Below, one piece after another: positions 13,616 to 45,521 of a stretch of DNA of 64,000 nt. Each line of letters starts with the position of its first letter. Within the stretch, counting starts at the first letter, position 1. A model generated the notes under the pieces. That model ran no database searches and was not told where the DNA came from. It saw only the letters and a program-made list of their open reading frames with translations. Location: IMG/VR virus record IMGVR_UViG_3300042484_002457, positions 62,001 through 126,000 of that record; one strand, given 5' to 3'. The translations under genes and the position numbers were made by a program.

Positions 13616-13891
13616 ATGTTTACAGCAGACGCAATCATCGACACCGTTCAAACCAGTAAAAAGACTTTTGTCAAGACTTTTGTACAAAACGAAACAGCAG
13701 CCAAGGCCATGAATGAGTTCATTGACGCTCAAGCTGACTACACCAAGAAGGCAGCTCGAGTTGGAATGGACACATTTACTACACTCAGCACCGAAATGGT
13801 CAAAGCTGGTCAGAACGCTATGAAATTTGACTACACCAAATTTGGTGAAGGCATCATGAAAGCTTACACAGCTACCGCAGCCAAAAAGTAA
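13616..13891 (+). CDS. Phasin-like protein
   Basis: Small Ala/Thr/Lys-rich amphipathic helical protein; AGGAGA RBS; 5' hairpin ataggac...gtcctat at 13559-13586. Confidence 0.5.
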   Translation: MFTADAIIDTVQTSKKTFVKTFVQNETAAKAMNEFIDAQADYTKKAARVGMDTFTTLSTEMVKAGQNAMKFDYTKFGEGIMKAYTATAAKK

Positions 13892-13909
13892 TACTCAAGT
13901 GTTACATTT

Positions 13910-13937
13910 AGAGCCCCGCAAGGGGCTTTTCTTTTGG
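13910..13937 (+). terminator. Intrinsic terminator, copy 1 of a 28-bp direct repeat
   Basis: AGCCCC-GCAA-GGGGCT followed by a T-tract; identical to 15051-15078. Confidence 0.9.
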
Positions 13938-13953
13938 CAAAATTGTTGTGTGT

Positions 13954-13971
13954 TTGTAACAAAATTGTAAC
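13954..13971 (+). promoter_or_regulatory. Pho box
   Basis: TTGTAAC-AAAA-TTGTAAC, an 11-bp-period direct repeat resembling CTGTCAT-AAAA-CTGTCAT, upstream of pstS. Confidence 0.7.
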
Positions 13972-14017
13972 ACATTTTGACCTAAATACATGTGTCACTA
14001 ACACAAGGAGACTCACA

Positions 14018-15022
14018 GTGAAAAAACTATTTGCTATTCTCGTAGCCGCAGTAACAATTTCTGCACAGGCTGCAGACATCACAGGGGCAGGTGCCACCTT
14101 CCCTTATCCAATCTATGCCAAGTGGGCTGAAGGCTACAAAAAAGCCACAGGCACTGGTATGAACTATCAAAGTATCGGATCATCGGGCGGCATTCGTCAA
14201 ATCAACGCAAAGACTGTGGACTTTGGTGCCACAGATGCTCCAGTAAGCGGTGAAAATTTGGACAAGCAAGGGCAAGTACAGTTTCCTGCAATCATTGGCG
14301 GAACAGTTCCTGTTGTTAATCTAGATGGTTTTAAACCAGGTGAACTACGCATCACAGGACCAGTCATGGCCGAAGTGTTCTTGGGCACGATCAATCGGTG
14401 GAATGATCCCAAACTTGTAGCATTGAATCCAGGTAAGACATTGCCCAACACAGAAATCACCATTGTACATCGTGCTGATGGTTCAGGTACAACATTCAAC
14501 TGGACAGACTATCTTGCCACAGTAAGCCCAGAGTGGCTACAACGTGTGGGTCGTGGTGCCGCAGTCAAGTGGCCAGCAGCCACGTCAGTAGGTGGCAAAG
14601 GCAACGAAGGTGTGGCTGCCAACGTGAACCGCATCAAAGGTTCAATTGGTTATGTAGAGTATGCTTATGTCAAGAAAAACAACATGACATTCCTGCAACT
14701 ACAAAATCGATCAGGACGGTATGTTAGTCCAGATGATTCAACATTTGCCGCAGCCGCAGATGGTGCTGATTGGTTCTCAGTTCCTGGTATGGGATTGAGC
14801 ATTGTGGATCAACGTAATCCTGCGGCTTGGCCAGTGAGTTCAGCAAGTTTTATCATCATGTACAAGACCCCTGCCAACAAGGCCAACAGTGACGAAGTGT
14901 TAAAATTCTTTGACTGGGCATTTAAGAATGGCAAGAAAGATGCTGCTGACTTGGACTATGTGGCATTACCTGACACGTTGACACGTCAGATCCGTGAGCG
15001 TGTTTGGACACAGATCAAGTAA
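14018..15022 (+). CDS. pstS: Phosphate ABC transporter substrate-binding protein
   Basis: GTG start after AAGGAG; signal peptide; GAGATFP, YQSIGSSGG, RADGSGTT, IGYVE. Confidence 0.97.
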   Translation: MKKLFAILVAAVTISAQAADITGAGATFPYPIYAKWAEGYKKATGTGMNYQSIGSSGGIRQINAKTVDFGATDAPVSGENLDKQGQVQFPAIIGGTVPVVNLDGFKPGELRITGPVMAEVFLGTINRWNDPKLVALNPGKTLPNTEITIVHRADGSGTTFNWTDYLATVSPEWLQRVGRGAAVKWPAATSVGGKGNEGVAANVNRIKGSIGYVEYAYVKKNNMTFLQLQNRSGRYVSPDDSTFAAAADGADWFSVPGMGLSIVDQRNPAAWPVSSASFIIMYKTPANKANSDEVLKFFDWAFKNGKKDAADLDYVALPDTLTRQIRERVWTQIK

Positions 15023-15050
15023 CCAGCAAGTATACAAAAGTACTACAACA

Positions 15051-15078
15051 AGAGCCCCGCAAGGGGCTTTTCTTTTGG
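15051..15078 (+). terminator. Intrinsic terminator, copy 2
   Basis: Identical to 13910-13937. Confidence 0.9.
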
Positions 15079-15107
15079 TTGACTCAAAATGCCCAATTTG
15101 CTACAAT
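15079..15107 (+). promoter_or_regulatory. Sigma70 early promoter (cassette family)
   Basis: TTGACT-17-TACAAT with the conserved cccaatttg spacer. Confidence 0.8.
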
Positions 15108-15135
15108 AGTGGCTTAACAACACACAGGAGTCACT

Positions 15136-15336
15136 ATGTTTGAACCCGGACTTGTTGCACGATGCGCAGTACTAAAACGCAAACTTCAGCGCGAGTTTGA
15201 GGCTCGTCCGGCTGTGACACTGGAGCGTGAATGCCGCTGGCAAAAAATTGGTGTGTCACAAGTGTGCCGCCGGTTGGCCCAAAGGTATCGCTTGCCTGTG
15301 TACAAAGTTGTTCAATTGTGCCACCCTTGTTTGTGA
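15136..15336 (+). CDS. Hypothetical protein
   Basis: AGGAG RBS after the promoter. Confidence 0.6.
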   Translation: MFEPGLVARCAVLKRKLQREFEARPAVTLERECRWQKIGVSQVCRRLAQRYRLPVYKVVQLCHPCL

Positions 15337-15343
15337 AATGTTT

Positions 15344-15428
15344 GTAGTACTTGAGTACTACAAACATTTTGGTTGACTCGAAATGCCCAATTTGCTATAA
15401 TACATACATACACAGCAATAAACAGGAG
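15344..15428 (+). promoter_or_regulatory. Palindrome + sigma70 promoter + RBS cassette
   Basis: GTAGTACTTGAGTACTAC; TTGACT 15373; TATAAT 15396; AGGAG. Confidence 0.88.
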
Positions 15429-15431
15429 TAG

Positions 15432-15617
15432 ATGATGCGTAGAACAGCAGCAGATCGACAGGCAGAAGCCGCCCGTGCCCAGCAAATGACTGAACAGGCC
15501 CAACCGCGTGTCCAGGACCGCAAGACTGGTGAATACTACAACCCACAAGAAGCCTTTGACGCTATGATGAACAAGCCCGAGATCCTGGCAGTGTTCAAGC
15601 GTTTGGCCATTCGTTAA
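15432..15617 (+). CDS. Hypothetical protein
   Basis: Follows the cassette RBS. Confidence 0.65.
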   Translation: MMRRTAADRQAEAARAQQMTEQAQPRVQDRKTGEYYNPQEAFDAMMNKPEILAVFKRLAIR

Positions 15618-15626
15618 GGAGTTGAT

Positions 15627-15836
15627 ATGAACGAACGAATTAAGGAACTAGCCGATAAGGCAGGTGTACGAAGCATCTATTTCGAAGGCGAAAGTATTCA
15701 AAAACTTGCCGAGTTGATTGTGAAAGAATTTTCAAAGCAGGTTCAAATTGAAGGTCGCTTTGGGCTCGAACGAGACCAGACTTTGATTCGGCTTTGCTGT
15801 GAAAATGCCAAGAAACATTTCGGAGTTGAGGAATGA
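15627..15836 (+). CDS. MNERI/KFAELIV/HFGVEE microprotein 1
   Basis: Three conserved blocks shared with five other ORFs. Confidence 0.8.
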   Translation: MNERIKELADKAGVRSIYFEGESIQKLAELIVKEFSKQVQIEGRFGLERDQTLIRLCCENAKKHFGVEE

Positions 15837-16072
15837 ACGAACGAATTCGAGAACTTGCTGAACAGGCTGGATTTTATTTTTACGATATGCACGATATTGA
15901 CGGCCAAGACTTAGGTGAATCTATTGAAGCGGATAAGTGGTCTGTTGCCGAAAAGTTCGCCGAGTTGATTGTGAAAGAATGTCAAACGGTTGTTGAATGG
16001 GCAATCAGTGTAGATTCTACAATCGACCGAGTGCCTATGTTGATCCAAGAACATTTCGGAGTTGAAGAATGA
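15833..16072 (+). CDS. HFGVEE-family microprotein 2
   Basis: MNERIRELA...EKFAELIVKEC...HFGVEE. Confidence 0.8.
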   Translation: MNERIRELAEQAGFYFYDMHDIDGQDLGESIEADKWSVAEKFAELIVKECQTVVEWAISVDSTIDRVPMLIQEHFGVEE

Positions 16073-16224
16073 ACCTACGTGAAATGATGACTGAGCGAGT
16101 CCTGTTTGCAGTTGATGAGGATGCCCTGGCCACAGAGTTCAGCATCAGCCCGGACGAGATTGCCACACTCAGCGATCTGGACTTCCTGGAACTGTTTGAA
16201 CAGGTCACTGGATTTAATGGTTAA
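16069..16224 (+). CDS. 51-aa acidic hypothetical protein (not in ORF track)
   Basis: Starts in the junction ATGA; MNLREMMTERVLFAVDEDAL... Confidence 0.65.
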   Translation: MNLREMMTERVLFAVDEDALATEFSISPDEIATLSDLDFLELFEQVTGFNG

Positions 16225-16250
16225 CAGAGCGTCCAAAAAGGAGTATTGAC

Positions 16251-16496
16251 ATGGGATGGGTAGTTTACGAGGTTGAGTCTGGTCGCATGATCAAGTATTA
16301 CAAAACGCCCAGCCCAGCCAAGTCTGAAGTAACACGACAGAAAAATTTTACCCGTGAAATGCAGGCTCAGTACCGTAACCATCGTGTTCGTGAGTACGCA
16401 GCCTGCTCATATCGTGACTATGAAGGTCAGTTGATGGGCCTGCGTGGTGCAGACTTTAAATTTTGGCAATTTTGCAACGCACAACCCAACACTTGA
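16251..16496 (+). CDS. Hypothetical protein
   Basis: AAGGAG RBS. Confidence 0.65.
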   Translation: MGWVVYEVESGRMIKYYKTPSPAKSEVTRQKNFTREMQAQYRNHRVREYAACSYRDYEGQLMGLRGADFKFWQFCNAQPNT

Positions 16497-16521
16497 CCAA
16501 TAATGCTTGTTTTGCTATAAT
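16493..16521 (+). promoter_or_regulatory. Sigma70 promoter
   Basis: TTGACC-17-TATAAT with extended TG; ATG 9 nt downstream. Confidence 0.8.
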
Positions 16522-16530
16522 TACACTGTT

Positions 16531-16680
16531 ATGAAGCCCATATCTTTTGTACTGCAACCACCACGTCAGCGTCGACATCAAGCACTGTTTGATTCGGACT
16601 TGCCGTTTCGTGGCCGTGCGGAACAGCCCAAAACAGTGTACAAACGCCAACCCAAACACCGAAAGACTGAACAGGAATAA
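16531..16680 (+). CDS. 49-aa ArfA-like protein (not in ORF track)
   Basis: ALFDSDLPFRGRAEQPKTVYKRQPKH resembles the ArfA core ALLHDPLFRQRVE...YMRKGKH. Confidence 0.55.
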   Translation: MKPISFVLQPPRQRRHQALFDSDLPFRGRAEQPKTVYKRQPKHRKTEQE

Positions 16681-16681
16681 C

Positions 16682-16909
16682 ATGACTGTACCAAACGAAC
16701 GCACCCGAGCAGTGATACATACCGAGCGGTTCTTGAGTGATCTCCTGGACCCAAAAAAGACGCCGCGAGTACCTCGTGCCATTCGACAACGTGCCAGTTC
16801 ATTGTTGAGACATTACCCCGGTGAGTTCCACATGAACACAATTGCGGATCGCGAAGATGCTGCTGATCACAGTTTGTCAATCAAGGTTTTTGGAAAGAGC
16901 TGGTCATGA
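16682..16909 (+). CDS. BPSL0761-like hypothetical protein
   Basis: MT.P.ERTRAV...FL..L...VP..IR..A..LLRHYP. Confidence 0.6.
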   Translation: MTVPNERTRAVIHTERFLSDLLDPKKTPRVPRAIRQRASSLLRHYPGEFHMNTIADREDAADHSLSIKVFGKSWS

Positions 16910-17145
16910 ACAAACGAATTCGAGAACTTCATATACAGGCGCAACAAGAGGCATGGAATGAACCAATCGATATTGAAAATTGTGCAGTAGAAGATATAAA
17001 AGGATTCAGTCAACAAGTTTACGAAAAGTTCGCTGAGTTGATTGTTCTCGATACAATTAAAAATTGTCGTGATATGTTTATGGTGAATAGTGTTAGTTGG
17101 AATCTCTTAAATGAGAAACTAGAACATTTCGGAGTTGAAGAATGA
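16906..17145 (+). CDS. HFGVEE-family microprotein 3
   Basis: MNKRIREL...EKFAELIV...HFGVEE. Confidence 0.8.
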   Translation: MNKRIRELHIQAQQEAWNEPIDIENCAVEDIKGFSQQVYEKFAELIVLDTIKNCRDMFMVNSVSWNLLNEKLEHFGVEE

Positions 17146-17372
17146 ACCAAGTTTTAGTAAACCTGCTGTCTAATCGAGCAGTAAGATTGGGTGAGCACTC
17201 TTGGCAATGGGCCGAGAAAAAGACTGGCAATCCTTCCTTGAAAAATTCTGTGACTTCTCGTATGTTTCGGTCCGATCTTGTAGAAGTGGTCGGTGCAGAA
17301 ATGAAACTTACTGCTATGGGTCGTATACAAGCAGAACAACATTTCGGAGTTGAGGAATGTTTAAGAAGCTAA
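17142..17372 (+). CDS. Unrelated ORF carrying the HFGVEE tail
   Basis: Bounded by two junction repeats; reads through HFGVEE into CLRS. Confidence 0.65.
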   Translation: MNQVLVNLLSNRAVRLGEHSWQWAEKKTGNPSLKNSVTSRMFRSDLVEVVGAEMKLTAMGRIQAEQHFGVEECLRS

Positions 17373-17587
17373 TTGACATATTCAAAGAGCCCGAGCATGG
17401 CATAGTGAAGTTGAGTTTTATTGCCCTGGACGAGAATGGAGAACCCTATGAGGATATTGCAACAATGCCATATCATACACAATACATTCAAAGTGATGTG
17501 GAAGCAAAGTTTGTGGCATTCATGAGTTTACGGAATCACCGAGTTGTTGAAATCACAATACTAGAAGTAATTAAAACAAGTGGATAA
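17357..17587 (+). CDS. Hypothetical protein, paralog of 25856..26119
   Basis: G.VKL.FIA.D...EPYED.AT.PY shared. Confidence 0.7.
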   Translation: MFKKLIDIFKEPEHGIVKLSFIALDENGEPYEDIATMPYHTQYIQSDVEAKFVAFMSLRNHRVVEITILEVIKTSG

Positions 17588-17591
17588 TATA

Positions 17592-17801
17592 ATGAACGAA
17601 CGAATTCAAAAACTTGCTAGAGAGGCTGCTTTGGCCGAAAGCTGGGGACCCGGAGTTTGGCAAACCACATTTACTGAAAAGTTCGCCGAGTTGATTGTGA
17701 AGGAAACCATGCAGGTTGTTGCTAACCAATTGCCTAGCAATCAGTATCTTGATGTAGCCCATGCAGTAATTGAGCATTATAAGGATGACGATGTTACTTG
17801 A
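17592..17801 (+). CDS. HFGVEE-family microprotein 4, tail replaced
   Basis: MNERIQKLA...EKFAELIVKE; ends EHYKDDDVT. Confidence 0.75.
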   Translation: MNERIQKLAREAALAESWGPGVWQTTFTEKFAELIVKETMQVVANQLPSNQYLDVAHAVIEHYKDDDVT

Positions 17802-17901
17802 AATTTTACTGTTTGTTATTGGAGTAATTGGTTTGATTTTGCTCTTTCGTTGGGTAGACAAGGTTAGAACCGATCCTTTAGACTACCCTCAGGATTATTA
17901 A
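17791..17901 (+). CDS. 36-aa single-TM protein (not in ORF track)
   Basis: MLLEILLFVIGVIGLILLFRWVDK...; AAGGA RBS. Confidence 0.5.
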   Translation: MLLEILLFVIGVIGLILLFRWVDKVRTDPLDYPQDY

Positions 17902-17922
17902 GAAACATTTCGGAGTTGAAGA

Positions 17923-18090
17923 ATGAAAATAACCATGACAGGTGAGCACGAAGGTAAATCTGTAACGATTGCCGTTTGGGAATATTCTCCCGAGATTGTT
18001 AAAGGCAATCCTATCGAAGTAGAAGAAAAATTATGGCTTGCTATCAAACAGCAAATGACCCACTACATTAAGAAGGTGATTGAAGAATGA
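17923..18090 (+). CDS. 55-aa hypothetical protein (not in ORF track)
   Basis: Starts in the junction repeat at 17904; ends ...IEE with ATGA overlap. Confidence 0.6.
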   Translation: MKITMTGEHEGKSVTIAVWEYSPEIVKGNPIEVEEKLWLAIKQQMTHYIKKVIEE

Positions 18091-18365
18091 ACAAACAACT
18101 GATTAGAGATTTAGCCATCACAGGTGGCATTTATGATTGTATTTGTGATCCTTACGACAAGTTAAAGAACGGTGATTACTACAGTAGTGTAATGGTTGAT
18201 TTGGAGCGTTTCGCTGAGAAGATTGTGAAAGAATGTACTGAACAAATCAAGACACAGGGTATCAGCGCCTCTAGTGAAGATTATGGCGATTATGAAATAG
18301 GATTTAACGCAGGGTTATTTCATGCTCTCTACACAATCAAACAACATTTCGGAGTTGAAGAATGA
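18087..18365 (+). CDS. HFGVEE-family microprotein 5
   Basis: ERFAEKIVKEC...HFGVEE. Confidence 0.8.
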   Translation: MNKQLIRDLAITGGIYDCICDPYDKLKNGDYYSSVMVDLERFAEKIVKECTEQIKTQGISASSEDYGDYEIGFNAGLFHALYTIKQHFGVEE

Positions 18366-18592
18366 ACGAACGAATTAAACAAATCACAGGACAGGTACTA
18401 GATGAAATAGTGCCCGAGACTTGGGTAGCGTTGGGCTACGACAAAATCAAAGAGATTCAAAACCGCACAGCCGAGTTGATTGTTCGGGAATGTGCCAAGT
18501 TTCTAGATGAGAATTCTGGCTATGATGAATGCAACAATTCTTGGCATCCTGAACCAGAAGATTTATTACAACATTTCGGAGTTGAACTATGA
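18362..18592 (+). CDS. HFGVEE-family microprotein 6
   Basis: MNERIK...AELIVREC...HFGVEL. Confidence 0.8.
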   Translation: MNERIKQITGQVLDEIVPETWVALGYDKIKEIQNRTAELIVRECAKFLDENSGYDECNNSWHPEPEDLLQHFGVEL

Positions 18593-18804
18593 ACCATCAT
18601 GTGACAAACACAGACAATCCCGTGGACTTTCCACCAGCACCTGGCCGTGCCACAGTGGAGGTTGAACTTGATGACCACGAGTGGTACGAACTCATGAAAC
18701 TGGCACATGAACATGACATCACCTTGAACCAGTTGGTGGAACAGATCTTGCGTGACTTTGTCCAGGAGCATCATGATGGCACGTTGCCTGAATGGACCCT
18801 ATAA
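18589..18804 (+). CDS. Ribbon-helix-helix-like protein
   Basis: Strand VEVEL, helix, then LAHEHDITLNQLVEQILRDF (Arc/CopG-like pattern). Confidence 0.5.
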   Translation: MNHHVTNTDNPVDFPPAPGRATVEVELDDHEWYELMKLAHEHDITLNQLVEQILRDFVQEHHDGTLPEWTL

Positions 18805-18867
18805 GCCTAGCAATCCACGTTCGGTACGTGGCGTAGTAATATTTGAGTTAAAGTGGGGCTAAATATC

Positions 18868-19458
18868 ATGCAGGAATCAAAAATGACCACAGAAACAGAT
18901 GTTACCACAAGCCATGGGCAAGAGCTTGCAGATGCAGGTCTCATGGTACTCATGGGTGAGGTTGAAAACGATTCTATTAAACCTGTGATTGAATGGATCC
19001 TGTATGAAAATCATGTGAGCAAGAAAAAGCGACAAGAGCTATTGCTCATGATCTGTAGTGAAGGCGGAGATTTAAGTGCCGCCTTTGCCTTGATTGACGT
19101 GATGCGTAGCAGTCGTTTGCCTGTCAAAACAGTGGGACTGGGCCAAATTGGATCTGCTGGCTTGTTGATTTTTCTTGCTGGCACACCTGGTCGACGTGTG
19201 CTAACTCCCAACACCAGTATTCTAAGTCATCAGTTCAGCTGGGGCAGTGATGGCAAAGTACATGAACTGTTTGCTACCATGAAAGAGTTTGAGCTTACAC
19301 AAAAGCGCATGGTACAGCACTACAAAGAATGTACCGGGCTTGGTGAAGAAGAAATTCGCACAGCCTTGTTGCCACCCCATGATGTGTGGCTCACAGCAGA
19401 AGAAGCTCTTGCACTAAATGTGTGCGATGTAATCAGTCCAGCAATGCGTCAGGCTTGA
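18868..19458 (+). CDS. Divergent ClpP-like protease (peptidase S14)
   Basis: CSEGG, GQIGSAG (Ser), SHQ (His), HDVWLTAEEA (Asp). Alternative start at 18883. Confidence 0.85.
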   Translation: MQESKMTTETDVTTSHGQELADAGLMVLMGEVENDSIKPVIEWILYENHVSKKKRQELLLMICSEGGDLSAAFALIDVMRSSRLPVKTVGLGQIGSAGLLIFLAGTPGRRVLTPNTSILSHQFSWGSDGKVHELFATMKEFELTQKRMVQHYKECTGLGEEEIRTALLPPHDVWLTAEEALALNVCDVISPAMRQA

Positions 19459-20093
19459 CTTACAGGTTTCCCACCAATGGTTACCTGGATCACATCATTT
19501 GGATAACGCTGAGAAACTTGCTGTTTCACCTTGTCAATTGATTGTTTAATTTTTGATTGAAGTTCGCCAGGAGCAATATGTCGTTGGTCAAACTCTATTG
19601 ACCCATGCACGCCATATTGATTGTTTGGATCAACTGATTTTATCACCACAATGTTGTTTTTATAATCCTGCATCCCAGCGTCTTCTTGAGATTGTGCTGC
19701 TTGGCTTGCTGCTTGCCCGGCAGCAGAGTTATTGTAACGCTCAACATCTTTTTTGTATTCGTCACGGATATCGTTATCAACGTTGAAACCTTGATCAGCA
19801 AGGAATGAATCCATTTCTTCTTGAACTGCATCATCAATCATCATGTACGCTTCTCTACCAGCTTCCATGCCTTTTGTTAGAAAAGCCTCGGCACACTCAT
19901 CAATTTCATAAGCATCACTTTCGTTTTGACTTGCGGAGGTTGATCCTGAAATATCAAAATTAAAATGACCTTCGGCATACAACTTTGCCATTTCTTTCAG
20001 AGCCATGCCATATGCAAACGGGCCGTTATCTTCGCTGCCACCAGGTGCGAACTCAGACAAGTAACTCTCTGTGATAATATCCTGTATTTTCAT
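19449..20093 (-). CDS. Acidic hypothetical protein, probably late/virion
   Basis: TAAATA 6 nt upstream; MKIQDIITE leader. Confidence 0.65.
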   Translation of the reverse strand: MKIQDIITESYLSEFAPGGSEDNGPFAYGMALKEMAKLYAEGHFNFDISGSTSASQNESDAYEIDECAEAFLTKGMEAGREAYMMIDDAVQEEMDSFLADQGFNVDNDIRDEYKKDVERYNNSAAGQAASQAAQSQEDAGMQDYKNNIVVIKSVDPNNQYGVHGSIEFDQRHIAPGELQSKIKQSIDKVKQQVSQRYPNDVIQVTIGGKPVSQA

Positions 20094-20098
20094 AAAAC

Positions 20099-21691
20099 TT
20101 ATTTACCTCTAAGTTCGCGACCCAATGTGGCCACATCGGTCTTGGGCGCACTAGTATTACGGGCTGCTTGAACTCCGGGTCCCTTGAGGCGGGGTTCTTG
20201 CGTCACAGCGTTTAGATCAGCGGTGCTGAGTTTTGCTTTTTCGTTGCCGCCTCCGCTTTGGCTACCAATTTCAACATTGGCTTTTTCTTTGCCAGGGCTG
20301 ATTTCTACACTGAGCTTGCCTTTCTTGGGATCAGATGCCGATCCTTTTGTTTTGAGTTTTACCTCACCTTTGAGTTTGGCGGGCCAGAATGCTTCAGTTA
20401 CTAACTTGCCATTTTTTACATTGGTATAAAGTTGCACAAAGTTATAACCAAGACTTTCGATCAATGCTTCGCGCAGGTTGGGCACAGCCGAACCTTTGTT
20501 CACAGCGTTGATAATATCAGTGGTCACAGCATACCAAGCCTTGCCACCATCACTGTTGTCTGAGTTCTCAACTTTGTCACTTAGGCGTTTGTTAAACACT
20601 TGCATGATGTTTTTTGGCACAGGTTTGTTGGTCTTAACTGTGGACTCTAAGCCGGCAATCAATTCGTTACTAAATGGCATGAGGGGTACATATTCTGCAG
20701 GAACATTGTTGGGATTGATCTCATACATAGAGTTCAGCATTTCAAATGGTTGCGCAAACGTGCTCACACTGGGGTTTTGGGCACTGTCAAGAAATTCAGC
20801 AGCTTCGGGATATTTTTTTCGCACATCTGCGGGCAGCTTGATTGATGTCAAGCTTGGTGGTGCACCTTTGCCAGCAGCCTTGCTAGAAATCTTGATACTG
20901 TGACCAGTTGCATCGTTGGTAACGCTAAAACTATCAGCTAGTGGGTTGCTAACGCTTTTAGGGAAATACATAATCATTGAACCAAGATCTGTTCCAATGA
21001 AGTTGTCAAAATCTTCTCTGTTACCTTGCTTGAATGGCACAGTTCCCGCAACCAGGCCCAACACACCCAGGTATTCAGAAGCATATAACTCAATTGCTTT
21101 GACTTCTTGTGCTGATAAGCCTGCGGGAATTTCAGGAATTTGACCTTGTGTGATTTGCTTGGCCATGGCAACAACTGCTTGACCAACTTTGCCTAATTGA
21201 GCAATTTGCGGACTATTTGCAATTGCATCATACATGTCGATTGCTGGGAAACCGCCAGCTGACAAAATATTTTCAATTGGGTTGTTCATATCAGCAATGT
21301 CGGTATCCTCTGAACCAAACACATCTGATCCTTTGATCTTGATTCCTTCTGCTTCTTTGCTGCCAAATTCTACTGTTTTTAATAATTCATTATTTTTTAT
21401 GGTGTCCCCATCAGTGGTGGTCAGCACGATAGGTTTTGTCATGCCCTGCGATAACCAAGTTTTAACATTAGGTGCTTCGGCAGGATTAATAGTCACTTCG
21501 CCACCACCGGCTTTTTCAGTTGCAGTGAACGGGCTTGAATTAATGACCTTCCAAAGAAAAAGTTCTTGTCTAGTCATTAATTGCCCTGTTGTGGGATTTT
21601 TGACCGCAGACATTTTTTTTGCAGGTATTTCGGCAGCGCCTAATGCAGCTTCTGCTAGTACGTTATCGAGTAAATTGAGTAGGTCTCTCAT
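20099..21691 (-). CDS. Hypothetical late protein with possible PD-(D/E)xK-like core
   Basis: MRDLLNLLDNVLAE leader; E...NPLAD...IKISSK. Confidence 0.55.
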   Translation of the reverse strand: MRDLLNLLDNVLAEAALGAAEIPAKKMSAVKNPTTGQLMTRQELFLWKVINSSPFTATEKAGGGEVTINPAEAPNVKTWLSQGMTKPIVLTTTDGDTIKNNELLKTVEFGSKEAEGIKIKGSDVFGSEDTDIADMNNPIENILSAGGFPAIDMYDAIANSPQIAQLGKVGQAVVAMAKQITQGQIPEIPAGLSAQEVKAIELYASEYLGVLGLVAGTVPFKQGNREDFDNFIGTDLGSMIMYFPKSVSNPLADSFSVTNDATGHSIKISSKAAGKGAPPSLTSIKLPADVRKKYPEAAEFLDSAQNPSVSTFAQPFEMLNSMYEINPNNVPAEYVPLMPFSNELIAGLESTVKTNKPVPKNIMQVFNKRLSDKVENSDNSDGGKAWYAVTTDIINAVNKGSAVPNLREALIESLGYNFVQLYTNVKNGKLVTEAFWPAKLKGEVKLKTKGSASDPKKGKLSVEISPGKEKANVEIGSQSGGGNEKAKLSTADLNAVTQEPRLKGPGVQAARNTSAPKTDVATLGRELRGK

Positions 21692-21752
21692 TGTGTTTCC
21701 ATGAAAATTATAGTATACTTATCCTAGTGCATTACTTAATACAGGAGAATTT

Positions 21753-22346
21753 ATGCCCAGTTTGATCCCCATGGTTGTTGAACAAACCTCAAAAGGCGAG
21801 CGCAGTTACGATATCTACAGTCGCTTGCTGAAAGATCGTGTGATCATGCTAGACACAGACGTTAACGAGCACACAGCCAGTTTGTTGGTTGCTCAGTTGT
21901 TGTTTCTTGAAAGCGAAAATCCTGACAAGGACATCAGTTTGTATATCAACAGCCCGGGTGGCAGTGTAACAGCAGGTATGGCCATTTATGATACCATGCA
22001 GTTTATCAAATGCGATGTGCAAACCATTGTGATGGGGCAAGCTGCCAGCATGGGTAGTCTGCTAAGTACAGCAGGAGCCCCAGGCAAACGCATGATGCTG
22101 CCCAATGCACGTCACATGATTCATCAACCATCAGGTGGCGCACGTGGCATGCAAAGTGACATTGAAATCAGCTACAACGAAATCACTTACTTGAAACGTC
22201 GACTAACTGAAATTTACGTCCGGCACAACACTGCTGGCAAAACCTATGATGACTTTGTGCGGGACATGGACCGTGACAAATTCATGAGCGCAGAACAAGC
22301 ACTTGAATACGGCTTGATTGATAAAATTATTGACCAACGTGGCTAA
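21753..22346 (+). CDS. clpP: ATP-dependent Clp protease proteolytic subunit
   Basis: [46 protein letters not shown]. Confidence 0.96.
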
Positions 22347-23628
22347 TTCTGAGATCTTCTGTAACACACCGTGGTACGAGCTACACATCTATTGGGATGG
22401 CAGCTTGGGTATCTGCTGCCAGGAAGATCACAAACTCTACGCTGGCACAGACTACAACATTGCCACCATGACCATTGCTGAGTGGTTCAACTCTGCTCCA
22501 GTGCAGCAATTTAGGCAAGCAATATTGGGCAATACTCCAGTGAGTGCATGCAGAAGATGTTATGTTGAAGAATCTCATGCCGGAAAAAGTCGCCGCTTGA
22601 AAAGCAATCAAAAAAGTGTGATTTTCATCCAGGCATTTCAAGAAAGCTTTGAACAAAGCCCATGGCGAAAGCACTTTGATTCGTCGGGACTGACTGCCAC
22701 ACAGCCTATTGACATACACGTGGACCTGGGCAACTACTGCAACTTGGCCTGCAAAATGTGCAACGCTCGGGCCAGTTCGCAAATTGCTGCCCAGGAAGTC
22801 AAGTGGGGTATTGAATCTAGTAGACCTTACCTGGGGCAAGACTGGACCAAAAATGCTGATACTTGGGCCAGCTTCAAGCAGCAATTGTTAAATATACCGG
22901 GCCTGAACAATATTCACTTCATGGGCGGTGAAACATTGTTGACTGATCGGTTTGAAGACTTGGTAGACTGCATGATTGAACATGGTCGGTTTGATCTGTG
23001 TTTTAGTTTTGTCACCAACGGCACAATTTTTCAACCTAAACTGATGGCCAAGCTGTCAAAGTTTCGTCGTGTGGGCATTGAAGTTAGCATAGAGACTGTG
23101 AGCGAACACAATGCCTATCAGCGACAGGGCACAGACACTGCCCAGGTGCTGGCCAACATTGAAAAATATCAAGAGTGGGACAACGGCTCCAACATCACCA
23201 TTACTCTTCGTCCAGCAATCAGTGCACTAACAATTGGTCACTATCACACTCTACTGGCGTATGCATTGGCCAATAAATTCATAATCAAAAGTTTGTTGGT
23301 AAACCGACCTGAATATCTAGATGTAAAGATTCTACCTGAATCAGCAAAAAGCACATATATTCAATACTATGAAAATATTTTGCAAGAACTTGAATATGTG
23401 TCAGTTAAACTAGACTATAACGAAAGTGATCCAAATAACTTTCGAGAAATAATAAAGCAACAAGCTCGGATGTGTATAAACATGCTGGGTCAAAACCAAC
23501 CAGGCAACATTGACCAGTTACAGAAACAGTTTGTTGAACATTGCAAAAAGTGGGATCAGGTCTACGGATACAATGCTGTAAAGCTTTATCCTGAACTTGC
23601 TGAGGTATTTGATCGATATGGCTACTAA
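22339..23628 (+). CDS. Radical SAM protein with N-terminal SPASM/twitch-like domain
   Basis: CNLACKMC and GGE; N-terminal C.PW...CC...CRRC. Confidence 0.88.
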
Positions 23629-24034
23629 AGTAAGTCTTTCAGTTACTTTGACACCGGTTGATCGGCCCTGGGTTCGAATATCTGTTGGTGACTACAAAAA
23701 ACACATCAACCTAACTGATACAACCCGGTTTGATATTGACTTTGAAACTGAATCCTTGGCTCAAGTACTGTTGATTGAACATGTTGAAAAACACCATAAT
23801 GATCCCACAACCGCAGTGATTGTGGACAGTATTGGATTTTTTGCAATAACAGATCCCAAGTTTGTTTGGGCTGGGGTATACTATCCTGAGTATCCTGGCC
23901 ATTATCCTGATAAAACGTCGCCGCTGCTGGGACACAATTATCTCAGTTGGAACGGCACTTACCGGTTAGACTTTGATGTTCCAGTGTTTACTTGGATGCA
24001 CAAAATACTAGATTTTGGTCGGATTTATCAGTAG
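23618..24034 (+). CDS. Hypothetical protein
   Basis: Overlaps the radical SAM stop. Confidence 0.65.
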   Translation: MATKVSLSVTLTPVDRPWVRISVGDYKKHINLTDTTRFDIDFETESLAQVLLIEHVEKHHNDPTTAVIVDSIGFFAITDPKFVWAGVYYPEYPGHYPDKTSPLLGHNYLSWNGTYRLDFDVPVFTWMHKILDFGRIYQ

Positions 24035-24117
24035 TGGTTTCGGGTAAACCTGGTGCTCTTGCGATACTGATACAGTATCTCAGCCCAGCTCACCAAAAAG
24101 TCATACATAGTTTTCAT
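24028..24117 (-). CDS. 29-aa peptide MKTMYDFLVSWAEILYQYRK... (not in ORF track)
   Basis: ATGA-coupled to 24114..24284. Confidence 0.4.
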   Translation of the reverse strand: MKTMYDFLVSWAEILYQYRKSTRFTRNHY

Positions 24118-24284
24118 AAAAAACCTTGTGTTTGTTTGCGATAAAACTCGCGTTCGTAGTGCTCAACATCACCCACGTTGGATGGTTTACGACTTGTGAT
24201 ATACTGTTCCAAACAACGTTGATAGTCTTGTTTTGGGAACATTTCGGCTAGCTTTTCAAGCATTCTTTCAATTTTTGCTGTCAT
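24114..24284 (-). CDS. 56-aa DUF3563-like protein (not in ORF track)
   Basis: AAGGA RBS; TAAATA at 24301-24306; LEQYITSRKPSNVGDVEHYEREF. Confidence 0.5.
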   Translation of the reverse strand: MTAKIERMLEKLAEMFPKQDYQRCLEQYITSRKPSNVGDVEHYEREFYRKQTQGFL

Positions 24285-24316
24285 GATATTTCCTTCTCAG
24301 TATTTACCATGAGTCG

Positions 24317-24333
24317 TTATTGCAGTGCAGCAA
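24317..24333 (-). promoter_or_regulatory. PhaR-like box TTGCTGCACTGCAATAA
   Basis: TGC-N3-GCA palindrome directly upstream of the late promoter. Confidence 0.45.
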
Positions 24334-24382
24334 ATACTTGATTTTCTTGACAATCCCAGTTGTTTGCGTGTATAATATCAGT

Positions 24383-24829
24383 ATGCGTTTATTTTTAGAT
24401 ACCGAATTCAACGGCTTCGGCGGCCGACTTATATCCATGGCCCTGGTGCCCGAAAACTCCAAAACTCGGGAGTTTTATAAAGAAATTGAAATTCGAGACC
24501 AGTTAGAACCCTGGGTGCGAGATAATGTGGTTCCGCATTTGATTTTGATTCCCTGTTCGCATTGGGATTTTCAACAGGCTCTAGCACAGTACTTGTGGGA
24601 AGTAGGTGAATGTACCATTGTAGCAGACTGGCCTGATGATATCCGGTACTTTTGCGAGTCGTTAATTACTGGCCCAGGCATGATGATCAATATGTTACAC
24701 AATATTAAATTTGAACTGGATTGCAGTATCGAATACCAATCAGTAGTACCGCATAATGCTTTGCATGACGCCAGGGCCATACGCGACTGGTACCTACAGC
24801 GTGAACAGCGCCTGGCTCAACAAAAGTAG
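24383..24829 (+). CDS. DEDDh 3'-5' exoribonuclease (Rv2179c-like)
   Basis: FLDTEF...HNALHDA; promoter TTGACA...TATAAT upstream. Confidence 0.8.
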   Translation: MRLFLDTEFNGFGGRLISMALVPENSKTREFYKEIEIRDQLEPWVRDNVVPHLILIPCSHWDFQQALAQYLWEVGECTIVADWPDDIRYFCESLITGPGMMINMLHNIKFELDCSIEYQSVVPHNALHDARAIRDWYLQREQRLAQQK

Positions 24830-24908
24830 TACTCAAGTACTACAAAATTTCTGGTTGACCAAAATTGCCCAATTTGCTATAATATACACATAGCAAAGCA
24901 AAAAGGAG
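24826..24908 (+). promoter_or_regulatory. Palindrome + promoter + RBS cassette
   Basis: GTAGTACTCAAGTACTAC (contains the upstream TAG); TTGACC 24855; TATAAT 24878. Confidence 0.88.
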
Positions 24909-24914
24909 CCTGAA

Positions 24915-25202
24915 ATGACCAAGCAAGATCACACAGTGTACATCTACAAAACAGATCGTCGCACCAAGAGTGGTGAGCGTCTTGTCAGCACCACTGTTTG
25001 GCGCAACCGTGATGCAGCAGAAATGAAACGTGAAGTGCGTGAACTGCAATACGAACTTTGGCCTGTGAGCCGAGGCTTCCGTATTGAGTTCTTTCCCACA
25101 ATGGTCACTGTCAAAAACTTGATAACTGGCCAGGACATTGAAATTGACCGTGACACTCCCTGGTCGTGCAACCCTGCGTCAGAATCTTATTGGTCGAGGT
25201 AA
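24915..25202 (+). CDS. Hypothetical protein
   Basis: Bracketed by two cassettes; VKNL.TG..IEI..DTPW.C.PASE.YW. Confidence 0.75.
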   Translation: MTKQDHTVYIYKTDRRTKSGERLVSTTVWRNRDAAEMKREVRELQYELWPVSRGFRIEFFPTMVTVKNLITGQDIEIDRDTPWSCNPASESYWSR

Positions 25203-25280
25203 CACTTGAGTATTACAAATTTTGGTTGACCAGAATTTCCCAATTTGCTATAATATAGACATACAGTAACAAAACAGGAG
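25199..25280 (+). promoter_or_regulatory. Palindrome + promoter + RBS cassette
   Basis: GTAACACTTGAGTATTAC (contains the upstream TAA); TTGACC 25226; TATAAT 25249. Confidence 0.88.
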
Positions 25281-26128: not shown

Positions 26129-26212
26129 GTAATACTTTATAGTACTACTTTTTCTGGTTGACCAAAATTTCCCAATTTGCTATAATATACACATAGCAAA
26201 GCAAAACAGGAG
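26129..26212 (+). promoter_or_regulatory. Palindrome + promoter + RBS cassette
   Basis: GTAATACTTTATAGTACTAC; TTGACC 26158; TATAAT 26181. Confidence 0.88.
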
Positions 26213-28923: not shown

Positions 28924-28941
28924 TAAGTAGTTAGTACTACA

Positions 28942-28968: not shown

Positions 28969-29017
28969 CTTGACCATTTATACAAGACACTGTATAATAC
29001 ACATGTAAAGGAAAACC

Positions 29018-38678: not shown

Positions 38679-39100
38679 TGTTAATGTTTGCATACGGTAT
38701 GAACACCAATCCCAAAGAGATGGCTCGACGTTGTCCGCAGGCTCGGAGCCTGGGTCATGCTCGACTTGTAAACCACAGCTTCCGGTTTGCGCAATATGCA
38801 GATGTGGAACCACAGTCGGGCAGTTTTGTAGAAGGGGTGTTGTGGGAGATCACTGAAGAATGCCTTCGTGCTCTGGACCAGTTAGAAGGTTACCCTGTTT
38901 ATTACAATCGTGTGGTGAGTTCTGTGGTGCATGAATCTAGAACCTATCATGCTCTAGTGTACCGCATGCAGCCAGGGCGCCGGGACTATGGGCCTACTCG
39001 TGACTACTATCGTTTGGTCACAGAAGGCTATCAAGCACATCGTGTGCCCACTGACCAGCTGGAAAATAGTGTAAACTATAGTACTACAAATTTTGGTTGA
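38678..39100 (+). CDS. Gamma-glutamylcyclotransferase (AIG2-like)
   Basis: FAYG.N, V.GVLWEI, LD.LEG.P..Y.R. Confidence 0.85.
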   Translation: MLMFAYGMNTNPKEMARRCPQARSLGHARLVNHSFRFAQYADVEPQSGSFVEGVLWEITEECLRALDQLEGYPVYYNRVVSSVVHESRTYHALVYRMQPGRRDYGPTRDYYRLVTEGYQAHRVPTDQLENSVNYSTTNFG

Positions 39101-39608: not shown

Positions 39609-39997
39609 GCGGATATCAAACAATTTTGCGTATTCGACGCATTGAAGAAACTGTCGCCAAACTTGGATTCATGTTGGCCAATTCCCGGCATGGATGGGAC
39701 AACAGCAACCCTGACATGGTGGCCCTCAAGCCCCGTGACGATGATGCAGTGCCGGGCTACAGCCGAGATGCTGAAGTGTTTCGTGGTACCTTGGAAGAAC
39801 TGGAAGTTTGGTTGCGTGGTGTGGAGTGGGCACGAAGCTACGACCGTGTGCTTCGAATCAGCGACGACAAAAAGAGAGCCAAGTACGAGGATCGAGAGCG
39901 CCTGAGAATTGCAGAAATGCGCAAACGAGAAGAACAGAAAATGCTACTGGCTGTGCTAAAGGCGCCCGATCACGAAAACAGCCGGGTAAAAAAGTAA
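39605..39997 (+). CDS. Hypothetical protein
   Basis: ATGA-coupled; stop lies inside the palindrome. Confidence 0.7.
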   Translation: MSGYQTILRIRRIEETVAKLGFMLANSRHGWDNSNPDMVALKPRDDDAVPGYSRDAEVFRGTLEELEVWLRGVEWARSYDRVLRISDDKKRAKYEDRERLRIAEMRKREEQKMLLAVLKAPDHENSRVKK

Positions 39998-40076
39998 TAC
40001 TTTATAGTACTACTTTTCTGGTTGACTCAAAATGCCCAATTTGTTATAATATACACATAGCAAAGCAAAACAGGAG
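39994..40076 (+). promoter_or_regulatory. Palindrome + promoter + RBS cassette
   Basis: GTAATACTTTATAGTACTAC; TTGACT 40022; TATAAT 40045; near-identical to the 26129 copy. Confidence 0.9.
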
Positions 40077-40586: not shown

Positions 40587-40844
40587 GTGATGAACATCGA
40601 AATTGAATACGACCTGTCCGGCAACGCGGCACCCGACTATGGCATGTACTCTGACATTGGCAATGCCGCGGTGCATGCCATTGTATTGGCTGCCCAATCT
40701 AACAAGATGACATGGGTCCAAACATTGCGAGCTCTGCGAGCTCTGGCAGAACAAGAACAGTTTGGCGAAGCCATGGACACCATGGTGCGTGAAATGGTGT
40801 ACAGTGCCCTGGGCATCAAAGACGAGTCGTTTTACGTGTTGTAA
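40587..40844 (+). CDS. Hypothetical protein
   Basis: YGMYSD.GN.AV...EA.DT.VRE; stop lies inside the palindrome. Confidence 0.7.
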   Translation: MMNIEIEYDLSGNAAPDYGMYSDIGNAAVHAIVLAAQSNKMTWVQTLRALRALAEQEQFGEAMDTMVREMVYSALGIKDESFYVL

Positions 40845-40921
40845 TACTTGAGTATTACTTTTTTTTGGTTGACCAGAATTTCCCAATTTGCTATAATAGA
40901 AGTATAGTAAGAAACAAGGAG
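40841..40921 (+). promoter_or_regulatory. Palindrome + promoter + RBS cassette
   Basis: GTAATACTTGAGTATTAC; TTGACC 40869; TATAAT 40892. Confidence 0.9.
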
Positions 40922-45478: not shown

Positions 45479-45521
45479 TACTCTAGTAGTACTTGACCAA
45501 TAATCCTGGATATGCTATAAT
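45475..45521 (+). promoter_or_regulatory. Degenerate palindrome + sigma70 promoter
   Basis: GTAATACTCTAGTAGTAC (contains the upstream TAA); TTGACC 45493; TATAAT 45516. Confidence 0.8.

What the first reader, a model, noticed from the sequence alone, without database searches (positions are those of the whole stretch)
13888..25216. The 18-bp palindrome occurs in both orientations, including its mismatch
Seen: 15344 GTAGTACTTGAGTACTAC and 24826 GTAGTACTCAAGTACTAC are exact reverse complements. The imperfect copies 13888 GTAATACTCAAGTGTTAC and 25199 GTAACACTTGAGTATTAC are also exact reverse complements, although the flanking transcription is on + in all four. Inference: the site acts as double-stranded DNA (dimer operator or recombination core) and can be flipped relative to its promoter, by micro-inversion or insertion in either orientation.
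Basis: seen in the sequence. Interest (0 to 1): 0.6.

Follow-up and report, generated by a model that had tools for sequence, protein, structure and literature searches.

The report
Palindromic box in phage promoter cassettes
The 18-bp palindrome is one module of a short regulatory cassette repeated between the small early genes of an uncultured freshwater jumbo phage; its "two orientations" are a 2-bp centre that toggles between TG and CA during evolution, not a programmed switch.

Summary
13888/25199 and 15344/24826 are exact reverse complements, and the motif family is far above chance (8 hits against 0.04 expected).

The window lies in a 209.5-kb viral contig from lake water, with a T4-superfamily terminase. 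The 18-mer is two 7-bp boxes, GTANTAC, separated by 4 nt. It sits at the stop codon of the upstream ORF and at the upstream edge of a conserved sigma-70 promoter cassette. This resembles the PeSL cassettes of T4-like phages.

Across several hundred related viral contigs:
- The boxes are nearly invariant, while N4, N15 and the centre vary.
- TG and CA centres are about equally common. The single-step intermediates CG and TA are almost absent.
- 5 of 14 orthologous loci with several members carry both TG and CA, so the centre does flip in one step. Template-switch loop inversion or conversion from a sister cassette would both do this.

Asymmetric copies are strongly orientation-biased (about 77:5 and 8:1). 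All four combinations of mismatch arm and centre exist (8:1:1:1), so the "flipped mismatch" is coincidence. Contigs from four lake runs show no mixed centre.

Reading as double-stranded DNA by a symmetric protein is my favoured view, but it is unproven. A hairpin role remains a live rival.

The parts
13888..13905 (+). 18-mer copy with CA centre; its second box is the variant GTGTTAC. The stop codon TAA of ORF 13616-13891 is at positions 2-4.
13910..13937 (+). GC-rich intrinsic terminator hairpin plus T-run directly after the 13888 copy. The Pho-box-type pstS promoter region follows.
   Evidence: fold -26.8 kcal/mol, z -5.4
15030..15046 (+). Bulged 17-nt variant (GTATAC-AAAA-GTACTAC) after the pstS stop. 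A GC-rich terminator and promoter 15079-15107 follow.
15336..15369 (+). 34-bp palindrome that contains the 18-mer 15344-15361 (TG centre, G/C type).
   Evidence: 17-bp stem, -20.5 kcal/mol
15373..15401 (+). Family promoter (TTGACT...GCTATAAT), 11 nt after the 18-mer.
24826..24843 (+). 18-mer copy with CA centre, G/C type. The stop codon TAG of ORF 24320-24829 is at positions 2-4.
24855..24883 (+). Family promoter.
25199..25216 (+). 18-mer copy with TG centre; its first box is the variant GTAACAC. The stop codon TAA of ORF 24915-25202 is at positions 2-4. It does not fold as + strand RNA.
25226..25254 (+). Family promoter.
26129..26148 (+). 20-nt variant with a 4-nt centre (TTAT). Promoter 26158-26186 follows.
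28927..28940 (+). Shortened 14-nt variant. A GC-rich terminator and promoter 28970-28998 follow.
39068..39087 (+). Degenerate copy with an intact right box. Promoter 39097-39125 follows.
39994..40013 (+). 20-nt variant identical to the one at 26129. The stop of ORF 39566-39997 lies inside it. Promoter 40022-40050 follows.
40841..40858 (+). Perfect A/T-type 18-mer with TG centre, followed by T8. The stop of ORF 40587-40844 lies inside it. Promoter 40869-40897 follows. Likely orthologues L117 and L507 (judged by eye on flanks) carry CA.
45475..45492 (+). Copy abutting the -35 of promoter 45493-45521, with CT centre and second box GTAGTAC (direct, not inverted). Orthologue L294 has CA and GTACTAC.

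Best explanation
The 18-mer is the upstream module of a repeated intergenic regulatory cassette in a clade of uncultured freshwater jumbo myoviruses. The cassette order is: last codons and stop codon of the upstream ORF; two GTANTAC boxes 11 bp apart centre to centre; an optional GC-rich intrinsic terminator; an A/T tract; a strong sigma-70-type promoter with a conserved spacer; a leader; and a Shine-Dalgarno sequence. Architecturally it is a PeSL-like cassette.

Every constrained position of the 18-mer is symmetric. Only the central dinucleotide, and the middle base of each box, can define an 'orientation'. Because TG and CA are the same base-pair step in duplex DNA, I take the module to be read most likely as double-stranded DNA by a symmetric protein that has not been identified. 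This step is inferred; I put it at about 0.4, against about 0.3 for a hairpin role.

During evolution the centre switches between TG and CA in one step at a given locus. Either hairpin-mediated template switching (loop inversion) or conversion from one of the dozens of sister cassettes would do this. It is an evolutionary toggle, not a programmed inversion.

The exact reverse-complement relation of 13888 and 25199 is a coincidence of two binary states: which box carries the T>C variant, and TG versus CA.

Shown: the cassette anatomy, family-wide conservation, TG/CA polymorphism at orthologous loci, and orientation bias of the asymmetric copies. Inferred: the molecular reader and the mutational mechanism. 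The stated confidence applies to the overall classification.
For: Anatomy:
- All copies lie at gene ends upstream of family promoters, which are on + only (42:0).
- In 106 of 214 distinct elements the stop codon of an upstream ORF of at least 60 codons sits at positions 2-4 of the 18-mer.

Family:
- More than 120 loci in IMG/VR share the promoter.
- 132 of 425 distinct promoter contexts carry at least one box within 80 nt upstream, against 3-6 for permuted control boxes.

Conservation and pairing:
- Over 93 non-orthologous loci the box positions carry 1.7-2.0 bits. N4 carries 0.7, the centre 0.2-0.4, and N15 0.3.
- N4:N15 are Watson-Crick in 40/93, against 35.9 expected (p = 0.17). Purine-purine pairs are common.
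- The most abundant single variant has an A.C mismatch in mid-stem on the transcribed strand, and 25199 does not fold as + strand RNA.
- Adjacent GC-rich terminators vary in sequence while keeping their pairing, whereas the box sequence stays the same.

Centre:
- Counts are TG 16, CA 14, CG 0, TA 0 of 34 in the unbiased set, and CG 1, TA 1 of 186 overall.
- Orthologous loci: of 43 A/T-arm loci, 19 are TG only, 20 CA only and 4 carry both. Of 17 G/C-arm loci, 7 are TG, 9 CA and 1 carries both. Overall, 5 of the 14 loci with more than one member are polymorphic.

Context and precedent:
- ORFs flanking the window's copies have no significant Pfam family (9 of 10 no hit; one weak sub-threshold hits), as expected for ORFan cassettes.
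- pstS sits in many different contexts among relatives.
- PeSL precedent: PMC2839356, PMC4122927.
- Loop inversion at perfect hairpins by template switching: PMC8794818; PMC8604942, abstract only.
Against: - No binding protein has been identified. The 209.5-kb contig has no HTH_3 and no tyrosine recombinase hit, but it is only 58% complete by CheckV.
- About 9% of copies with full 8-bp arms have a 4- or 5-nt centre instead of 2 (18 against 186). A bulged copy also exists. A hairpin would tolerate these better than a rigid dimer.
- A-rich 5' and T-rich 3' flanks and the 34-bp palindrome at 15336-15369 look like terminator features.
- PeSL stem-loops also have lineage-specific consensus sequences, so sequence conservation alone does not prove protein recognition.
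- Inversion and gene conversion cannot be told apart with these data.
- The TG/CA polymorphism count comes from scans that could only retrieve TG or CA copies.
Confidence: 0.7

Rival explanations
1. The 18-mer works as a nucleic-acid hairpin, as the stem-loop part of a PeSL. It forms in the transcript of the upstream gene (or in single-stranded DNA) and acts as a weak terminator/attenuator or a 3'-end protector. The loop is free to vary, and TG/CA are two loop states.
For: - It sits exactly at the stop codon or gene end.
- The 5' flank is A-rich. The 3' flank is T-rich in 35 of 93 loci; the 40841 copy is followed by T8.
- Pairing is kept in variants with longer centres and in the 17-bp stem at 15344.
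- (A,T) and (G,C) combinations dominate where no separate terminator is present.
- At one orthologous locus the loop is hypervariable while the arms stay.
- In PeSLs of T4/PST and KVP40/nt-1 the stem-loop lies just upstream of the promoter.
Against: - There is no significant covariation at any variable pair over 93 loci.
- 53 of 93 elements are not Watson-Crick at N4:N15, which splits a 7-bp AU-rich stem.
- The hairpin alone gives only about -5 to -6 kcal/mol, and 25199 does not form it on the + strand.
- Many copies are followed directly by a proper GC-rich terminator, which would make a second terminator redundant.
- Equal use of UUGA and UCAA loops, with CG and TA absent, has no RNA-level reason.
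Confidence: 0.3
2. The 18-mer has no reader of its own. It is part of a homology patch kept uniform by frequent recombination and conversion between cassettes, within and between co-infecting phages. It persists because the cassettes spread with their ORFans.
For: - Non-functional-looking parts of the cassette are also conserved across many contigs. Examples are the promoter spacer CCCAATTTGC and the leader.
- The same promoter and leader occur with different upstream genes (L114 against the window).
- pstS is found in many different contexts.
- PeSL crossovers have been mapped inside the stem-loop.
Against: - The GC-rich terminators that lie between the 18-mer and the promoter in the same cassettes are not homogenised.
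- The box pair keeps its sequence across phages whose radical-SAM proteins are only 47-69% identical.
- The pattern of conservation is position-specific, at about 2 bits for box positions and 0.2-0.7 for N4, N15 and the centre. It is not uniform.
Confidence: 0.12
3. This is a programmed invertible element or recombination core. A recombinase or nuclease flips or inserts the 18-mer in either orientation relative to the promoter.
For: - Both centre states occur at 5 orthologous loci without intermediates.
- A tandem pair of mutually reverse-complementary copies lies in one spacer in L193 and L157.
- HNH endonuclease genes are present in the contig.
Against: - Asymmetric copies are about 77:5 and 8:1 in one orientation.
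- The mismatch arm and the centre are not linked.
- The contig has no tyrosine recombinase hit.
- Contigs from four lake runs show the window's centre at 24826 and 25199, with no alternative.
- Inverting 2 bp between 8-bp arms changes nothing that a promoter could sense.
Confidence: 0.03

Closest known systems
PeSL (promoter-early stem-loop) cassettes of T4-like phages (Arbiol et al. 2010, PMC2839356; Comeau et al. 2014, PMC4122927)
   Same: Both are short conserved intergenic cassettes repeated many times in regions of small ORFans. Each has a strong sigma-70-like promoter, an AT-rich upstream tract, a palindromic stem-loop just upstream of the promoter and a Shine-Dalgarno sequence at the 3' end. 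The stem sequence has a lineage-specific consensus. The flanking genes differ between relatives.
   Different: - The phage is a roughly 350-kb freshwater jumbo myovirus. Its terminase is only about 50% identical to those of Atu_ph07, Phosso and PA5oct, and it is not a described T4-like genus.
- The palindrome is AT-rich and weak, built of two boxes that are each palindromic. Often a separate GC-rich terminator follows it.
- The palindrome overlaps the upstream stop codon.
- Terminator activity, recombination at the element and mini-circles were not tested here.
Dyad-symmetric operators of dimeric helix-turn-helix regulators (e.g. lambda Cro/cI, CRP-type class I sites)
   Same: The site is 18 bp with two half-sites about one helical turn apart. 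Conservation is symmetric, the centre is not contacted, and a TG/CA step lies at the dyad. It sits upstream of the -35 in discrete distance classes (0, about 10, about 21, about 33 bp).
   Different: No cognate protein is known. About 9% of full-arm copies have a longer centre. Copies that abut the -35 often have the second box in the direct rather than the inverted reading.
Loop or spacer inversion by template switching at short inverted repeats (Monttinen and Loytynoja 2022, PMC8794818; PMC8604942)
   Same: There is a multi-nucleotide change confined to the spacer of a perfect inverted repeat. It converts the spacer to its reverse complement without intermediates and leaves no footprint in the arms.
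   Different: Here dozens of paralogous copies with either centre exist in each genome. Gene conversion would give the same pattern and cannot be excluded.
Integron attC sites
   Same: Both are imperfect palindromes at the 3' end of each gene cassette in an array of ORFans.
   Different: The phage element is 18 bp, against 57-141 bp for attC. Each cassette has its own promoter. No integrase-type recombinase was found in the contig. The sequence is conserved, rather than only the structure.

Membership tests
PeSL cassette | Strong sigma-70-like early promoter with an AT-rich upstream tract, repeated many times on one strand | tested here: met
   There are 42 promoter matches on + and 0 on - in the 209.5 kb. 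Fifteen lie in the window at up to 2 mismatches to TTGAC-N13-TTTGCTATAAT (19 at up to 3), against 1.0 expected for 3 mismatches. This is sequence-level only; activity was not measured.
PeSL cassette | Stem-loop next to the promoter that acts as a transcription terminator or attenuator | tested here: inconclusive
   A palindrome lies 0-34 nt upstream of the -35. It is weak (about -5 to -6 kcal/mol) and often mismatched. True GC-rich terminators are present in a subset. No functional assay was possible.
PeSL cassette | Located in hyperplastic regions and flanking ORFans | tested here: met
   Ten ORFs flanking the window's copies have no Pfam family above threshold (9 no hit; ORF 13616-13891 only weak sub-cutoff hits). 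The copies cluster in runs of small + strand ORFs.
PeSL cassette | Mediates insertion, deletion or replacement of ORFs between close relatives; mini-circles | tested here: inconclusive
   The pstS cassette sits in many different contexts, and the same promoter and leader occur with different upstream genes. Breakpoints at the 18-mer were not shown. Joints between promoter copies in Logan contigs have sides of only about 31 nt and may be repeat artefacts. Mini-circles cannot be tested here.
PeSL cassette | Host genome is a T4-like myovirus | tested here: inconclusive
   The terminase matches the T4 superfamily, with 2199 phage records hit and the best at about 50% identity. The Gp23 Pfam model found nothing in this partial contig, and its control also failed.
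Dimeric-protein operator | Dyad symmetry, with conserved positions symmetric and variable positions not covarying | tested here: met
   Logo and permutation tests over 93 non-orthologous loci.
Dimeric-protein operator | Fixed half-site spacing | tested here: inconclusive
   Among copies with full 8-bp arms, 186 have a 2-nt centre and 18 have a 4- or 5-nt centre. A bulged copy lies at 15030.
Dimeric-protein operator | A cognate DNA-binding protein | not testable with these tools
   No HTH_3 hit in the contig. The same 18-mer in two Burkholderiales MAGs is a single site per genome and was not found in 300 other genomes of that family.
Intrinsic terminator | GC-rich stem followed by a U-tract | tested here: not met
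   The stem is AU-rich, with 2-3 G/C pairs in 7. Only 35 of 93 copies have a T-rich 3' flank, and many are followed by A-runs.
Site-specific invertible switch | A recombinase, both states in one population, and an invertible segment that changes expression | tested here: not met
   No tyrosine recombinase hit. There is no alternative centre in contigs of four runs, though power is low. Only 2 bp differ between the states.

The most novel reading that the evidence does not exclude
The GTANTAC box pair is the operator of a clade-specific regulator, phage-encoded or host. That regulator marks about a third of the early promoters of a large, uncultured group of freshwater jumbo phages as a separate regulon. 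The distance classes of about 11 bp from the -35 would reflect face-of-helix contacts with RNA polymerase. The recurrent one-step TG/CA switches would be natural template-switch inversions at an operator dyad.
Probability: 0.2. Interest if true: 0.6.

Novelty: new variant of a known kind. Interest (0 to 1): 0.4.

Why it matters
The work extends PeSL-type regulatory cassettes from cultured T4-like phages to a large clade of uncultured lake jumbo phages, seen in hundreds of IMG/VR contigs of up to about 375 kb. These cassettes are thought to drive modular shuffling of accessory genes. The box pair is a sharply defined, testable sequence signal for early-gene regulation in phages that have no cultured host. 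The TG/CA dichotomy at orthologous loci, with intermediates missing, is a clean natural example of a concerted two-base change at a short inverted repeat. It does not point to a new kind of genetic switch.

Tried and rejected
- **Near-identity search against cultured phages:** no match for 8 kb of the window.
- **pstS-anchored orthology (80 loci):** pstS is not syntenic except in an identical contig, so it was useless for the orientation test. It is informative about cassette shuffling.
- **Whole-18-mer flip:** rejected from the orientation counts and the four-combination test.
- **G.U wobble logic for an RNA hairpin:** the 13888 type pairs on +, the most abundant variant pairs only on -, and both keep one orientation. 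There is no consistent strand.
- **Population heterogeneity:** only Logan contigs were on offer. They show the window's centre at 24826 and 25199 in runs X8 and X22 and nothing else. Contigs break at the promoter repeats, so this is a weak test.
- **Rfam:** no family in the window.
- **Host-operator lead:** the exact 18-mer occurs 20 times in 596 Gb of genomes, about what I estimate chance would give (roughly 17). Two related Burkholderiales MAGs carry it in a divergent intergenic region. It is a single site per genome and was absent from 300 other genomes of that family.
- **Integron-like or recombinase idea:** no PF00589 hit in the contig.
- **Literature search for the motif:** only unrelated primer hits.
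- **Coding-region hits:** 19 of the distinct sequence contexts holding GTAACACTTGAGTATTAC lie inside a conserved coding region of other viruses and are unrelated.

Full report
**Observation**

The motif family is far above chance: 8 strand-matches at 6 places with up to 3 mismatches, against 0.04 expected. Two more clean copies lie at 40841 and 45475. Diverged copies lie at 15030 (bulged), 26129 and 39994 (4-nt centre), 28927 (shortened) and 39068. Transcription is indeed on + everywhere. The whole contig has 42 promoters of the TTGAC/TATAAT type on + and none on -.

**Where it is**

The window is bases 62001-126000 of a 209,543-bp IMG/VR virus record rated 58% complete.
- Its terminase belongs to the T4 superfamily. 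The best cultured matches, at about 50% identity, are the jumbo phages Phosso, Atu_ph07 and PA5oct.
- The DNA has no near match among cultured phages.
- Runs that hold it are lake-water metagenomes.
- The window carries accessory genes: pstS, a CHASE2 adenylate cyclase, a radical-SAM/SPASM protein, MetK and tail-fibre genes.

**Anatomy**

Each copy sits at the end of a small + strand ORF. For 13888, 24826, 25199, 39994, 40841 and 45475 the stop codon is the TAA or TAG at positions 2-4 of the 18-mer. Family-wide this holds for 106 of 214 distinct elements, and most others stop within 7 nt upstream.

Downstream come either 9-11 A/T-rich bases and a highly conserved promoter, or a GC-rich intrinsic terminator and then the promoter. 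In some copies the promoter follows directly. The promoter spacer and the leader are conserved too.

The ORFs on either side have no significant Pfam family; nine have no hit at all and ORF 13616-13891 has only weak sub-threshold hits. The 18-mer is therefore the upstream module of a repeated intergenic cassette.

**What the unit is**

The 18-mer is two copies of a 7-bp box, GTANTAC, separated by 4 nt, giving an 11-bp period. Each box is itself palindromic around N.
- In 425 distinct promoter contexts from relatives, 132 have at least one box within 80 nt upstream. Four permuted control boxes give 3-6 hits, against 218 for the real box.
- Pairs with the 11-bp period dominate.
- Over 93 non-orthologous loci the box positions carry 1.7-2.0 bits. 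N4 carries 0.7, the centre 0.2-0.4 and N15 0.3.
- N4 is mostly A or G, as the stop codon requires. N15 is free.

**Family-wide test of 'both orientations'**

Relatives were fetched in three ways: by two proteins, by the promoter pattern, and by five exact 18-mers.

1. *Centre counts.* In the sample not selected on the 18-mer, elements with full 8-bp arms have centres TG 16, CA 14, TT 2, GA 1, AG 1, CG 0 and TA 0. Over all loci, CG and TA occur once each in 186.

2. *Orthologous loci*, defined by at least 80% identity of the 50 nt upstream.
 - For A/T arms there are 43 loci: 19 TG only, 20 CA only and 4 with both.
 - For G/C arms there are 17 loci: 7 TG, 9 CA and 1 with both.
 - Of the 14 loci with more than one distinct member, 5 are polymorphic.
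 - The largest has 23 members, 3 CA and 20 TG, with otherwise near-identical flanks.
 - The window's own 40841 copy (TG) appears to have CA orthologues in L117 and L507, judged by eye on the flanks.

So the centre is not fixed per locus, and the missing CG/TA intermediates argue against two independent point changes. One caveat is that these scans could only retrieve TG or CA copies. At another orthologous locus the centre reads AG, CA, CA, TC, TT and TT, so the centre is also simply variable.

3. *Asymmetric copies keep one orientation.*
 - GTAATACTCAAGTACTAC has a family promoter downstream of that reading in 59 contexts and of the opposite reading in 3. Inspecting the remaining 22 by eye gives about 77 to 5, with 2 unclear.
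 - The 13888 reading is found at 8 loci. The 25199 reading is found only in this phage's own lineage.
 - The two combinations that a whole-site flip cannot produce each occur at one locus: first-box variant with CA, and second-box variant with TG.
 - The four combinations therefore stand at 8:1:1:1, so mismatch and centre are not linked. L178 has the perfect palindrome with both boxes of the variant type, followed by the same terminator as 13888. This suggests the imperfect copies are chimeras or single changes.

4. *Population data.* Only Logan contigs were available. Contigs from X8 and X22 cover 24826-24843 and 25199-25216 with no differences. No alternative centre is listed in four runs. 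Contigs break at the promoter repeats. This is weak evidence against a mixed population.

**How it is most likely read**

*Against a hairpin that must pair:*
- There is no significant covariation at any variable pair. N4:N15 are Watson-Crick in 40/93 against 35.9 expected, p = 0.17.
- 53 of 93 are non-Watson-Crick there, including many purine-purine pairs.
- The most abundant variant has A.C in mid-stem on the transcribed strand.
- The 18-mer alone folds at only about -5 to -6 kcal/mol, and 25199 does not fold on +.
- Many copies are followed at once by a proper GC-rich terminator. Those terminators vary in sequence while keeping their pairing, whereas the boxes keep their sequence.

*For a duplex-DNA reader:*
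- Symmetry is nested, with each box palindromic and the pair palindromic.
- The half-sites are one helical turn apart.
- TG and CA are one and the same base-pair step and are used about equally.
- Distances from the 18-mer to the -35 fall in classes 0-1, 7-12, 20-22 and 26-35, with none at 2-6 or 13-19.

*For a hairpin:*
- The flanks are A-rich on the 5' side and T-rich on the 3' side.
- Pairing is retained in variants with 4- and 5-nt centres, 18 against 186.
- There is a 17-bp stem at 15344.
- PeSL stem-loops lie just upstream of their promoters and have lineage-specific consensus sequences.

I therefore favour a symmetric DNA-binding reader at about 0.4 over a hairpin role at about 0.3, and say so as inference. 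No candidate protein was found. The contig has no HTH_3 or tyrosine recombinase hit, and 3-4 HNH genes lie outside the window.

**How the centre switches**

A concerted two-base change to the reverse complement inside a perfect inverted repeat is the known signature of template switching during replication. Loop inversion can occur at perfectly pairing hairpins without a footprint in the stems, typically with 4-nt loops (PMC8794818; PMC8604942). Each genome also holds dozens of sister cassettes with either centre, so short conversion tracts would give the same result. PeSL crossovers have been mapped inside the loop. The two mechanisms cannot be separated here.

**Comparison with known systems**

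The closest known system is the PeSL cassette of T4-like phages. Architecture and genomic setting match. The differences are the AT-rich box pair, its overlap with the stop codon, the frequent extra terminator, and the phage clade. Terminator activity and cassette-mediated recombination were not shown here, so I file it as PeSL-like, a new variant. It is neither an intrinsic terminator nor an invertible switch (see membership rows).

**Verdict**

'The centre can flip' is supported on an evolutionary scale. 'Flipped including its mismatch, by inversion or insertion in either orientation' is not supported. Interest is moderate.

Noticed in passing
window 13940-14018: Upstream of pstS (13934/14019-15022) lie two direct TTGTAAC repeats 11 bp apart, a Pho-box-like arrangement. 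Relatives keep similar repeats. The pstS gene sits in many different gene contexts among 80 related loci, so it looks like a shuffled, host-PhoB-controlled accessory cassette.
   Followed up: partly
G000 whole contig; window promoters listed: All 42 strong promoter matches are on the + strand. The spacer (CCCAATTTGC) and the leader (ATATACACATAGCAAAGCAAAA) are conserved far beyond what sigma-70 needs.
   Followed up: partly
93 non-orthologous loci: Distances from the 18-mer to the -35 fall in classes 0-1, 7-12, 20-22, 26-35 and 40-46, with none at 2-6 or 13-19. This could reflect helical phasing or modular build.
   Followed up: partly
93 non-orthologous loci; The central dinucleotide avoids self-complementary steps: 4/93 against 29 expected. 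CG and TA are nearly absent, so perfect 18-bp palindromes are avoided.
   Followed up: partly
L193 and L157: Two copies lie in one spacer, GTAATACTTGGGTATTAC and GTAATACCCAAGTATTAC, separated by A7-8. They are reverse complements of each other and together form a 43-bp near-palindrome.
   Followed up: no
L531:2288-2305 and L522:7285-7302: The exact A/T-type 18-mer lies in the divergent intergenic region between an alpha/beta hydrolase and a TolC-like OEP plus ABC exporter. This occurs in two related freshwater Burkholderiales MAGs, one labelled Limnohabitans. It is a single site per genome and was not found in 300 other genomes of that family.
   Followed up: yes
L232-L271, various: GTAACACTTGAGTATTAC also occurs inside a conserved coding region (reading VTLEYYIGLT) of another group of viral contigs. 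This is unrelated to the intergenic element.
   Followed up: partly
window 24850-24895, 25225-25255, 26155-26190: Logan contigs of all four lake runs end at the promoter repeats. Depth there is 5-30 times higher than nearby. Several joints link one promoter copy to another (for example 24883>26155 and 25254>26155) with sides of only about 31 nt. These may be deletion variants or repeat artefacts.
   Followed up: no
window 3171-5222 (-), 7261-8505, 22318-23628, 30118-31041, 32944-34050, 54376-57798: Accessory genes are present: a CHASE2 plus adenylate/guanylate cyclase, a UDP-glucose dehydrogenase-like protein, a radical-SAM/SPASM protein, a metallophosphoesterase and MetK. There is also an 1140-aa protein with a stretch like the S8 peptidases of Phosso and Atu_ph07.
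   Followed up: partly
G000:C1:21039-21119, 150050-150121, 193352-193435, 207839-207970: Three to four HNH endonuclease genes lie in the contig, all outside the window. Some are close to cassette copies at 21131, 194175 and 206515.
   Followed up: no
L513, L516, L517, L520, L524, L529, L530, L532: Eight Heimdallarchaeota MAGs carry the same 18-mer at what looks like one conserved locus. It was not examined further.
   Followed up: no
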